From Polymyxa betae A26-41 (Eukaryota > Protista > Endomyxa: Phytomyxea): a stretch of 47,326 nt of DNA. The notes below the pieces were generated by a model. That model did not search any database. It was given only the letters and a program-made list of their open reading frames with translations, and was not told where the DNA came from. Both the position numbers and the translations under genes were made by a program. Positions 16,083 through 18,058 of this stretch are shown piece by piece (the first letter of the stretch is position 1; each line of letters begins with the position of its first letter). The stretch is from contig RBZT01000965.1 of NCBI GenBank assembly GCA_003693705.1, forward strand, positions 1-47,326, given 5' to 3'.

Positions 16083-18058
16083 CTATGCTGGCAGTGACTC
16101 AGGAGTCTTGTCGATATTTGTACTCTGAGCCTGAGATAAATCAAACATGGATAAACCTTGAGCAAGCACATCAGCGGGAAAGATATCGCGAACCCCTTTG
16201 ATCAGCTGTTGTGACCTATAATCAAGCACAGTTCGAATCAATTAAAAGCATCTTAAAGACAGTGATCAAACCTGGAGACGTATTCCTCAATTAACCTGTG
16301 TGTTTCTTTGCATTCATTCAGTATTTCATTGAACTCATTGCGAAGTCGAACAGCTTCCGATCTACTCCTGGTTAGCTCAGCGACTTGAGCAGGCTGCAGT
16401 TGAAATTGATCTTCCAAGAGCGAAGACCAGAGCGTCGACTGACGCAGCCAATCAATACCAGCTACAGCCAAAAGAAAATTACGAACCTGCTCGGGATCCA
16501 ATCCCCAAAGAGCAAATTTAGCTTGAGCTCCAGGAATCAACATAGTTCGAATAAGATTCATATCGTGAACGCTTACTAACTTCCTAGACAAAGGATGAAC
16601 AATAGGCACTGATAAAAAACTGATTCCAATTGCTGACCTGGTAATGTTTGATTCAAACCATGTATCCAATAACGTATCAAGAGAGCGGTCTCTAGGGTTC
16701 TGTAATGTCTCTCGAACATCACGAATAACTTTGGCCTCTGCAATGGTCATTCAGGAAGCATCCTTCACAAGAATACCATAACAGACCAATGACATTAATA
16801 TCACTATGCATCTCAAGCTCAGATATTTGTGCTGTTAGGCTCTCAATCGAATGCTTCAAATTATCCACATAGACCTAAACAACACTTGACGTTGAACTTT
16901 AAAAAAGTGGTGCCAGCGACCGACTTTTTTCTTATCCCTGGATGCTCTAGATAGAATGCTTTTACGGGATGACGTCGAGCATGTCAAAGCACCCTACAAT
17001 GAACTGAGCAAACAGTTCGAGATGCCACGAACAAGGAACCTTATTCGAGTCCAAACTTGCAGCGTCATCAACATTATAGGGCAGAGTTCTGGGTGTTCGA
17101 GCTCCATGACCACCGCCAATGACCTTTGTGTATCTAAATGCATAAGCTGAGAACGGCATGGGTTTGCTGGCGGCAGCGTGCATTTACTGGTCAAAGCCGG
17201 TCTGAATTGGTTCAGCAAATAAACTTCCTGGAATCATACTGCTGCTAAATAGACTGTTAATGATATATCAGCTTAATGCTCTTAAGCAACCTATGATCAA
17301 GTTTGTATTGCTGCAGATAATGAACTAGAACAATATGAGGTCGACACAGCATCCTATTATGATTGAGAACAATAACTTCAAAACCAGGTAAATAACTGAC
17401 CAGTATCCACGTCGATGAAATCCTTCACAAGTTTCGTGATGTGCATAACAACAATTGATAACATCAACACCAGCCACTTTCAGTTTCTCGTGATGCTCCT
17501 ACTTTACATCAGCTGTATTCAACCGTTATACAGAAAAAATACCAACTTTTATATTCTTGCCATCGCGTTTCTTCTTCCATTCGTGACCATCTTGTCGCCA
17601 TCTACGAACCTGTTAAGACATAAGGCGACCATGGTAACGATAATGACCGTTAGAACCTGGTTTTTGTTAAAGATCATGATATTGCCACTTGTTGGTGGTG
17701 TTGGAGCAGCTGTTGGAGAACATTTGAACCCATATTGTTGGAAATTTTCAAGAAGGTCGACCAGCTCGGTATTACGAAACCAACGCTGGCTGGCTGTTGA
17801 CCTAAACATGAAAATTACAAAGGCACCAGGCACAAAGGGGACAAGACTAATATGAGTTTATAAACCCAAATTAAAAACAATTATCTACCGAATAATATCG
17901 ATAGTGGACATGGTGAGAGGAGGGAATTTCACTGGTGCCGGATGTTGAGTGAATGTCGTTGAGGCAATTGATACGTTTGTTGTGGGAGACGGAATCGAAA
18001 TGCTCGTGGTAGCATCATGGCCTGCCGAAGGAACATTCGAACCGTTCGGCAATGCCAT
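16083..18058 (-). CDS. Transcription factor: CG-1 (CAMTA-type) DNA-binding domain fused to an atypical bZIP and a helical C-terminal region
   Basis: Spliced CG-1: SQRWFRNTELVDLLENF..PPTSGNIMIFNKNQ|VRRWRQDGHEWKKKRDGKNIK|EHHEKLKVAGVDVINCCYAHHETCEGFHRRGY|WMLCRPHIVLVHYL. bZIP: RKSILSRASRDKKK|VYVDNLKHSIESLTAQISEL. Introns 17802/17847..17888, 17610..17656, 17499..17546, 17354..17400, 17245..17290, 17134..17187, 16994..17039, 16875..16924, all GT-AG. Start (18058 or 17911) and stop are approximate. Confidence 0.8.

What the first reader, a model, noticed from the sequence alone, without database searches (positions are those of the whole stretch)
16083..18058. Hidden chimeric transcription factor: CAMTA-type CG-1 domain spliced in frame to a bZIP
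Seen: short exons rebuild a full CG-1 domain (RWFRNTE..WRQDGHEWKKKRDGKNIKEHHEKLKV..CCYAH..FHRRGYWML..IVLVHYL). Canonical introns 17245..17290 (46 nt), 17134..17187 (54 nt), 16994..17039 (46 nt) and 16875..16924 (50 nt) then carry the frame into a basic region, a three-leucine zipper and a helical tail. Known: CG-1 normally occurs in CAMTAs with TIG, ankyrin and IQ motifs and binds CGCG/CGTG boxes; none of those partner domains is visible here. I do not know of a described CG-1+bZIP architecture. Inference: a dimerising, calmodulin-independent regulator with two DNA-binding modules.
Basis: partly seen in the sequence, partly recalled or inferred. Interest (0 to 1): 0.9.

Follow-up and report, generated by a model that had tools for sequence, protein, structure and literature searches.

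The report
CG-1–bZIP fusion regulator of plasmodiophorid parasites
A root-parasitic protist, almost certainly Polymyxa betae, transcribes one gene that joins a CAMTA-type DNA-binding domain to a divergent bZIP module. The clubroot pathogen keeps the same join, and databases have annotated only its first half.

Summary
The fusion is real. They give one 447-aa ORF, 18058→16083 (−). CG-1 passes the Pfam cut-off in three exons separately and is the genome's only CG-1 match. Orthologues have the same layout: P. brassicae PBRA_004690 (annotated only 'CG-1 domain-containing') and a 416-aa protein encoded on intron-free contigs of an unidentified third organism. The bZIP is divergent. It is below Pfam's cut-off, has Lys in place of the invariant Asn in all three, and has about three heptads. 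The whole C-terminal half is collinearly homologous to stand-alone bZIP+helical-tail proteins of the same genome and of Spongospora (hhalign 97.9%). The tail resembles the TGA/DOG1 dimerisation domain only weakly. Best reading: a lineage-level fusion in which CG-1 reads DNA and the bZIP+tail supplies dimerisation, without ankyrin or IQ. I found no paper describing it, but could not run an InterPro architecture search. DNA binding by the bZIP is unproven. The scan's notes list this fusion only in this window, and a bZIP with a helical tail on another contig.

The parts
16083..18058 (-). Coding span of the 13-exon gene, 447 aa (ATG 18058, stop TAG 16085-16083)
   Evidence: RNA joints; frame check
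18059..18247 (-). 5' UTR as far as RNA contigs reach; no upstream ATG in it
17889..18058 (-). Exon 1: Ser/Thr/Pro-rich N-terminus ending in a short motif conserved in orthologues (aa 1-56)
17657..17801 (-). Exon 2: CG-1 domain, Pfam positions 2-45
   Evidence: PF03859 31.0 bits, E 2e-7
17547..17609 (-). Exon 3: CG-1 domain, Pfam positions 47-67
   Evidence: 23.6 bits; 20/21 identical to both orthologues
17401..17498 (-). Exon 4: CG-1 domain, Pfam positions 68-99
   Evidence: 35.6 bits; 30/32 and 27/32 identical to orthologues
17291..17353 (-). Exon 5: end of the CG-1 domain
   Evidence: 18/19 and 15/16 identical to orthologues; orthologues cover Pfam 2-115/116
17188..17244 (-). Exon 6: poorly conserved linker
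   Evidence: RNA joints
17134..17187 (-). Intron 6 (54 nt), the junction joining the two halves. If retained it gives an in-frame stop directly followed by an in-frame ATG (17183). It is spliced in all three runs; P. brassicae has no intron here
   Evidence: (57 letters on the shorter side)
17040..17133 (-). Exon 7: linker with a short motif conserved in all three orthologues (about 50% identity)
16925..16993 (-). Exon 8: basic region; Lys241 (16963-16961) at the Asn position, Arg249 (16939-16937)
   Evidence: profile matches CREB/GCN4/TGA7 in register
16787..16874 (-). Exon 9: leucine zipper of about three heptads (Leu259, Leu266, Leu273 at d; Val/Ile/Ile at a)
   Evidence: 17/26 and 13/25 identical to orthologues
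16638..16737 (-). Exon 10: start of the helical C-terminal domain
16487..16583 (-). Exon 11: conserved core of the tail, shared with stand-alone bZIP paralogues
   Evidence: 11.9 bits against a paralogue-only profile, 0/500 shuffles as high
16272..16438 (-). Exon 12: tail, long helix
16083..16215 (-). Exon 13, coding part: last helices and stop
15956..16082 (-). 3' UTR; contigs end at 16054 (9-nt poly(A)-like loose end in X3) or 15956 (X2)
   Evidence: tables 7 and 8

Best explanation
This is a single-copy, expressed, conserved plasmodiophorid transcription factor. It arose by joining a complete CG-1 DNA-binding domain to an entire member of a bZIP subfamily that has K-x7-R and a helical tail. 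SHOWN: one spliced ORF; full CG-1; the only CG-1 match in the genome; the same layout in two other organisms; C-terminal half homologous to stand-alone bZIP+tail proteins; no TIG/ANK/IQ. INFERRED: the short zipper and the helical tail form a dimer together, as zipper plus C-terminal domain do in plant TGA factors. This presents two CG-1 domains to DNA, probably at paired CGCG/CGTG-type sites. It may also let the protein heterodimerise with the stand-alone paralogues. The degenerate basic region probably adds nuclear import and weak or altered-specificity DNA contact, not a canonical ACGT/TGACG read-out. With no IQ motifs, control would come through dimer partners or tail ligands instead of canonical calmodulin binding. 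About 0.93 for the single conserved fusion gene; about 0.6 for the mechanism as a whole.
For:: 12 GT-AG introns spliced in three runs, one contig per run, lengths matching the model, poly(A)-like end at 16054. P0001, 416 aa on four intron-free contigs of 1352-1393 nt from another organism (PF03859 133.9 bits). P. brassicae PBRA_004690, 475 aa, one gene in several assemblies; three intron positions shared with P. brassicae in the bZIP/tail half, and a fourth within one residue; genes from both sides of the P. brassicae locus lie on this same contig; no other CG-1 in G000; a profile of fusion orthologues alone finds paralogue G000:C811 in both the bZIP and the tail; hhalign 97.9%, E 5.6e-13; 34-40 bits against a shuffled maximum of 6.9; the paralogue's Spongospora orthologue is named 'BZIP domain-containing'; identity is 76% in CG-1, 53-59% in basic region/zipper, 41% in the tail core and 29% in the linker. 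(PMC9360754): TGA factors have three heptads and dimerise through the C-terminal domain.
Against: The bZIP stays below Pfam's cut-off (15-18 bits against 27.6), as do the stand-alone paralogues. With fusion-only profiles, CREB scores only E 0.08 in the PDB. The link between tail and DOG1/TGA is not significant: Foldseek E 0.29, VIA Z 6.9 among many helical bundles, Atlas 0.76, and PF14144 finds nothing in the genome. The RNA evidence for this genome is from one study, as assembled contigs, not long reads. There are no binding or dimerisation data.
Confidence: 0.62

Rival explanations
1. A true two-headed DNA binder: both CG-1 and the K-type bZIP read bases, so the dimer recognises a composite element (CG-1 box plus a new bZIP half-site).
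For: Lys(-18), Ala/Ser(-14), Arg(-13), Arg(-10) and the KK.Y hinge keep bZIP spacing in all three orthologues. The stand-alone paralogues, which have no other DNA-binding domain, carry the same Lys, so K-x7-R is probably functional there. Substitutions at the Asn are reported in oomycete and maize bZIPs and are thought to change specificity (PMC4046829; PMC3514857).
Against: The basic region varies among fusion orthologues (9/17 identical) while the paralogue pair is identical over the core. The upstream basic cluster is replaced by Ser-rich sequence in the window gene and P0001.
Confidence: 0.25
2. Intron 6 is a switch. The fusion is one of several products, and retention gives a CG-1-only protein plus a bZIP+tail protein from ATG 17183/17159.
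For: The retained intron reads as a stop followed at once by an in-frame ATG. Logan contigs drop rare variants.
Against: Only the spliced form is seen in three runs. P. brassicae has no intron at this position, so such a switch is not conserved. A GTAA donor start makes an in-frame TAA common by chance (own knowledge).
Confidence: 0.08
3. The C-terminal half is not a bZIP at all, but a generic coiled coil after a basic NLS, so the protein is a CG-1-only factor with an unrelated tail.
For: Sub-threshold Pfam scores; fold searches return generic helical bundles.
Against: Collinear homology of basic region, zipper and tail to stand-alone bZIP-annotated proteins. Best Pfam hits of the P0001 segment are bZIP_1 and bZIP_2. 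The best Atlas clusters are bZIP clusters, though only at lead-level scores.
Confidence: 0.04
4. Two adjacent genes or a mis-assembly, joined only by in-silico splicing.
For: Contigs are not single molecules; the assembly is a metagenome bin (PMC6328671).
Against: The junction is read through in RNA. The continuous ORF is found on intron-free contigs of another organism and in independent P. brassicae assemblies.
Confidence: 0.01

Closest known systems
CAMTA / CAMTA-like transcription factors (CG-1, TIG, ANK, IQ, CaMBD)
   Same: Complete N-terminal CG-1 domain (Pfam positions 2-115 of 116 in the orthologues).
   Different: About 450 aa; no TIG, ankyrin or IQ. The CAMTA-like proteins of green algae still keep TIG and ANK (PMC4770041). 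Here a bZIP+tail takes their place.
Plasmodiophora brassicae PBRA_004690 (UniRef100_A0A0G4ILJ8; CEO96000.1, SPQ93455.1, XXQ29898.1)
   Same: Orthologue: same order of parts, shared introns, shared neighbours.
   Different: Annotated only as 'CG-1 domain-containing' or hypothetical; its bZIP and tail are unrecognised. Val at the third zipper d position; 7 introns against 12.
Stand-alone K-type bZIP+tail proteins of plasmodiophorids (G000:C811; Spongospora subterranea A0A0H5RPJ9; more distant G000:C904)
   Same: Lys at the Asn position, same hinge, short zipper, homologous helical tail in the same order.
   Different: No CG-1; a longer and strongly conserved basic region; the fusion has about 35 more residues between zipper and tail core.
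Plant TGA (group D) bZIP factors, bZIP + DOG1/NID
   Same: Three-heptad zipper followed by an all-helical C-terminal domain. TGA3 NID recurs in fold searches (Foldseek ranks 3, 8, 31; VIA rank 17).
   Different: TGA keeps N-x7-R and has no CG-1. Similarity of the tail is below significance and PF14144 does not match.
Non-canonical bZIPs with the Asn replaced (oomycete C-R and related classes; four maize group E members with Lys at -18)
   Same: The invariant Asn is substituted.
   Different: The P. sojae proteins carry no second DNA-binding domain (PMC4046829: no extra domains except one PAS).

Membership tests
CG-1 domain proteins (PF03859) | Pfam score over the cut-off, full coverage | tested here: met
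   Exons 2, 3 and 4 each pass the cut-off; orthologues 134-136 bits over positions 2/3-115
CAMTA | CG-1 domain | tested here: met
CAMTA | Ankyrin repeats (and usually TIG) | tested here: not met
   No hit in any exon or in the full-length orthologues; the mRNA ends about 30-130 nt after the stop
CAMTA | IQ motifs / calmodulin-binding domain | tested here: not met
   No Pfam hit; IQ pattern absent from both orthologues. Non-canonical calmodulin binding is untested
CAMTA | Binds CGCG/CGTG boxes | not testable with these tools
   Needs SELEX/DAP-seq
bZIP (PF00170/PF07716) | Score over the curated cut-off | tested here: not met
   15-18 bits against 27.6
bZIP | Invariant Asn of N-x7-R/K | tested here: not met
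   Lys in the window gene, P0001 and P0003
bZIP | Arg at -10 and x9 spacing to the first Leu | tested here: met
   K241-x7-R249-x9-L259; in register with CREB
bZIP | Leucine heptad repeat | tested here: met
   L259/L266/L273 with Val/Ile/Ile at a; L-L-L-L in P0001; L-L-V in P. brassicae
bZIP | Dimerises and binds DNA through the basic helix | not testable with these tools
K-type bZIP+tail subfamily (defined here by G000:C811 and A0A0H5RPJ9) | Collinear homology of basic region, zipper and tail | tested here: met
TGA / DOG1 (PF14144) | DOG1 profile match | tested here: not met
   No match in the genome or in the orthologues
TGA / DOG1 | NID-like fold of the C-terminal domain | tested here: inconclusive
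   Model pLDDT 78, pTM 0.50; Foldseek TGA3 prob 0.87 but E 0.29, rmsd 22; VIA Z 6.9, not above other helical bundles

The most novel reading that the evidence does not exclude
An undescribed transcription-factor architecture of plasmodiophorid plant parasites, in which a CG-1 domain and a Lys-type bZIP both read DNA as one dimer, recognising a new composite element. Its TGA/DOG1-like tail would serve as a dimerisation and possibly ligand-sensing module in place of CAMTA's calcium/calmodulin control.
Probability: 0.2. Interest if true: 0.78.

Novelty: new variant of a known kind. Interest (0 to 1): 0.58.

Why it matters
CG-1 is described almost only within CAMTA or CAMTA-like proteins with TIG and ankyrin repeats. 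No PDB sequence matched the CG-1 region here. A compact, naturally IQ-less and ANK-less CG-1 protein shows the domain can be re-wired onto a bZIP dimerisation scaffold. It is the only CG-1 match in the P. betae genome and is conserved in the clubroot pathogen. That makes it a concrete entry point into the little-studied gene regulation of plasmodiophorids. It also shows that automatic annotation misses K-type bZIPs in this group. It remains a domain rearrangement of two known families, not a new kind of machine.

Tried and rejected
(1) My first model read 16737-16252 as one exon. RNA showed two in-frame introns inside it, a different donor (16786) and a further last intron. The HMMER search of representatives and the own-genome search used that intron-containing stretch and so had reduced sensitivity. 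It was translated in scripts only to check the frame. Searches went exon by exon, or used the natural orthologues P0001/P0003; the joined search step was left out. (3) Single-sequence AlphaFold of P0001 failed (pLDDT 34) and was not used. (4) search for homologous proteins proved insensitive. It missed P0003 and returned no other CG-1 protein, so its blanks say nothing about range. (5) A metagenome scan with the CG-1 alignment found nothing; introns break such patterns. (6) Paper searches for CG-1+bZIP+domain fusion, CG-1+CAMTA+Plasmodiophora, and P. brassicae+bZIP+CG-1 gave 0 papers. SRA accessions were not found in papers, so the source of P0001 is unidentified. (7) No canonical CG-1 box, ACGT, TGACG or AP-1 site lies in 18059-18420, so there is no sign of simple autoregulation. 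(8) PF14144 (DOG1) and a tail-profile search of the PDB gave no TGA match. (9) Whether CG-1 came from a plant host could not be tested, because no outside CG-1 sequences were retrieved.

Full report
Source. The window is contig C991 of a genome of 27,085,814 bases in 1001 contigs. The Polymyxa betae draft has 1,001 contigs and 27,085,946 bp (PMC6328671), so the organism is almost certainly P. betae, a plasmodiophorid root parasite. This is an inference from assembly statistics.

Observation. Exons 2, 3 and 4, scanned apart, each pass the Pfam CG-1 cut-off and tile model positions 2-45, 47-67 and 68-99. Searches of the whole genome with PF03859 and with a profile of orthologous CG-1 domains find only this locus.

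Transcript evidence. Four runs of one study hold about half of the region's 31-mers, as expected for spliced RNA. In the three that were laid (X2, X3, X4), one contig per run covers the gene and skips 12 introns of 46-87 nt, all GT-AG on the minus strand. The critical intron 17187-17134 has 57 letters on its shorter side. X3 ends in a 9-nt poly(A)-like loose end at 16054. The spliced length from 18247 to 16054 is 1562 nt, equal to the X4 contig. Limits: the runs' library type is not on record, they come from one study, contigs are not single molecules, and rare isoforms are dropped.

Conservation. A HMMER search with the 3' part returned P0001 (416 aa) and a fragment, P0002. P0001 carries a full CG-1 (133.9 bits). 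It is encoded without introns on four contigs of 1352-1393 nt from SRR24080057-60; the organism is not identified. P0002 lies in genomic DNA just downstream of CG-1 exons. That gene is P. brassicae PBRA_004690, 475 aa, one gene model in several assemblies, named only 'CG-1 domain-containing protein'. Exon by exon, the window matches both proteins in order from end to end, apart from the weak linker exon 6. P. brassicae shares three intron positions in the C-terminal half (after the basic region, and two in the tail) and a fourth within one residue. Genes from both sides of the P. brassicae locus occur on this contig, at about 29.1-31.1 kb and 44.7-46.0 kb. Between the two orthologues, identity is 93/123 in CG-1, 9/17 in the basic region, 13/22 in the zipper, 41/100 in the tail core and 17/58 in the linker.

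Is the second half a bZIP? It fails Pfam's cut-off (15-18 bits against 27.6). It has Lys where bZIPs have the invariant Asn: K241-x7-R249-x9-L259-x6-L266-x6-L273. But the genome holds a stand-alone protein (G000:C811) with the same Lys, hinge and short zipper, followed by a similar tail. Its Spongospora orthologue is named 'BZIP domain-containing protein'. A profile built only from the fusion orthologues finds C811 in both parts in a whole-genome search (E 0.009 and 0.005). Profile-profile comparison gives 97.9%, E 5.6e-13. A profile of the stand-alone pair scores the fusion halves at 40 and 34 bits, against a shuffled maximum of 6.9. Window exon 11 alone beats all 500 shuffles. The combined profile ranks CREB first in the PDB, with TGA7, GCN4 and HY5 below; this is partly circular, and with fusion sequences alone CREB reaches only E 0.08. 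A third, more distant bZIP+tail gene is at G000:C904. So the fusion took up a whole bZIP+tail unit of a divergent subfamily. Substitutions of the Asn are known in oomycete bZIPs (PMC4046829) and Lys at -18 in four maize group E proteins (PMC3514857). Both papers expect changed specificity.

The tail. A model of the P. brassicae tail is all-helical (pLDDT 78, pTM 0.50). The C-terminal domain of TGA3 appears at Foldseek ranks 3, 8 and 31 (best prob 0.87, E 0.29) and at VIA Z 6.9. A DOG1 cluster appears in the Atlas at 0.76. None of these is significant, and PF14144 finds nothing. The three signals point the same way, and TGA factors likewise pair a three-heptad zipper with a helical dimerisation domain (PMC9360754). 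I treat this as a lead, with a probability of about one half.

Mechanism. Most likely the zipper and tail make a dimer that presents two CG-1 domains, and CG-1, the most constrained part, reads the DNA. The basic region has drifted faster than in the stand-alone paralogue, which argues for a reduced or altered role in base reading. Its spacing and key Arg are kept, though, so a two-headed binder remains open (about 0.25). No TIG, ankyrin or IQ is present, so canonical calmodulin control is unlikely; non-canonical binding is untested. An intron-6 switch is possible on paper (stop, then in-frame ATG), but only the spliced form is seen and P. brassicae lacks that intron.

Novelty. Described CG-1 proteins are CAMTAs or CAMTA-like proteins that keep TIG and ANK (PMC4770041). 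P. sojae bZIPs carry no such partner. Three targeted literature searches found no CG-1+bZIP protein. The library is incomplete, no InterPro architecture search was possible, and the homologue tool was insensitive, so the range beyond these three organisms is unknown. The protein is not a CAMTA (ANK and IQ tested, absent) and not a canonical bZIP (Asn absent, below cut-off). It is a CG-1 protein fused to a K-type bZIP+tail unit.

Verdict: real, expressed, conserved and apparently undescribed; a new variant built from known parts. Interest 0.58.

Noticed in passing
G000:C811:24022-24609 (-), L008; G000:C904 about 15275-15448 (-), L022: Stand-alone bZIP+helical-tail genes. C811 has Lys at the Asn position and a 52-53% identical Spongospora orthologue (A0A0H5RPJ9). 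C811 and its orthologue fall below Pfam's bZIP cut-off and the C904 piece scanned gave no bZIP hit, so bZIP counts in plasmodiophorids may be underestimates.
   Followed up: partly
window 18302-19400+ (+): A spliced, expressed gene on the opposite strand. Its RNA contig begins at 18302, only about 55 nt from the 5' end of the CG-1 gene's contig (18247): a very tight divergent promoter. Four GT-AG introns seen; no Pfam hit in two short exons tested.
   Followed up: partly
window 16072-16405: Run X1 (another study, 2020) holds an unspliced copy with 7 substitutions in 334 nt: another strain or close relative, probably DNA.
   Followed up: no
window 25816-27864 (-): 683-codon open frame with a 96-nt-period Ser/Thr/Pro-rich repeat array (26456-27758, strong GC skew) followed by a Tyrosinase domain (PF00264, 42.8 bits).
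   Followed up: partly
window 42690-43440 (-) and 44700-45990 (+): Two related, divergently oriented genes both match the gene directly upstream of P. brassicae PBRA_004690 (RING-finger hits in one annotation); the + copy is the closer one.
   Followed up: no
window 29100-30540 (+): MnmE/TrmE-like GTPase gene, orthologous to a gene downstream of P. brassicae PBRA_004690: the neighbourhood is kept but reordered.
   Followed up: partly
window 15012-15675: Short, low-depth unspliced contigs in the RNA runs downstream of the gene; unexplained.
   Followed up: no
P0001 residues 36-148: No PDB sequence matches the CG-1 region at E<=10, so the domain seems to lack a solved structure. These compact proteins might be convenient for solving one.
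   Followed up: no
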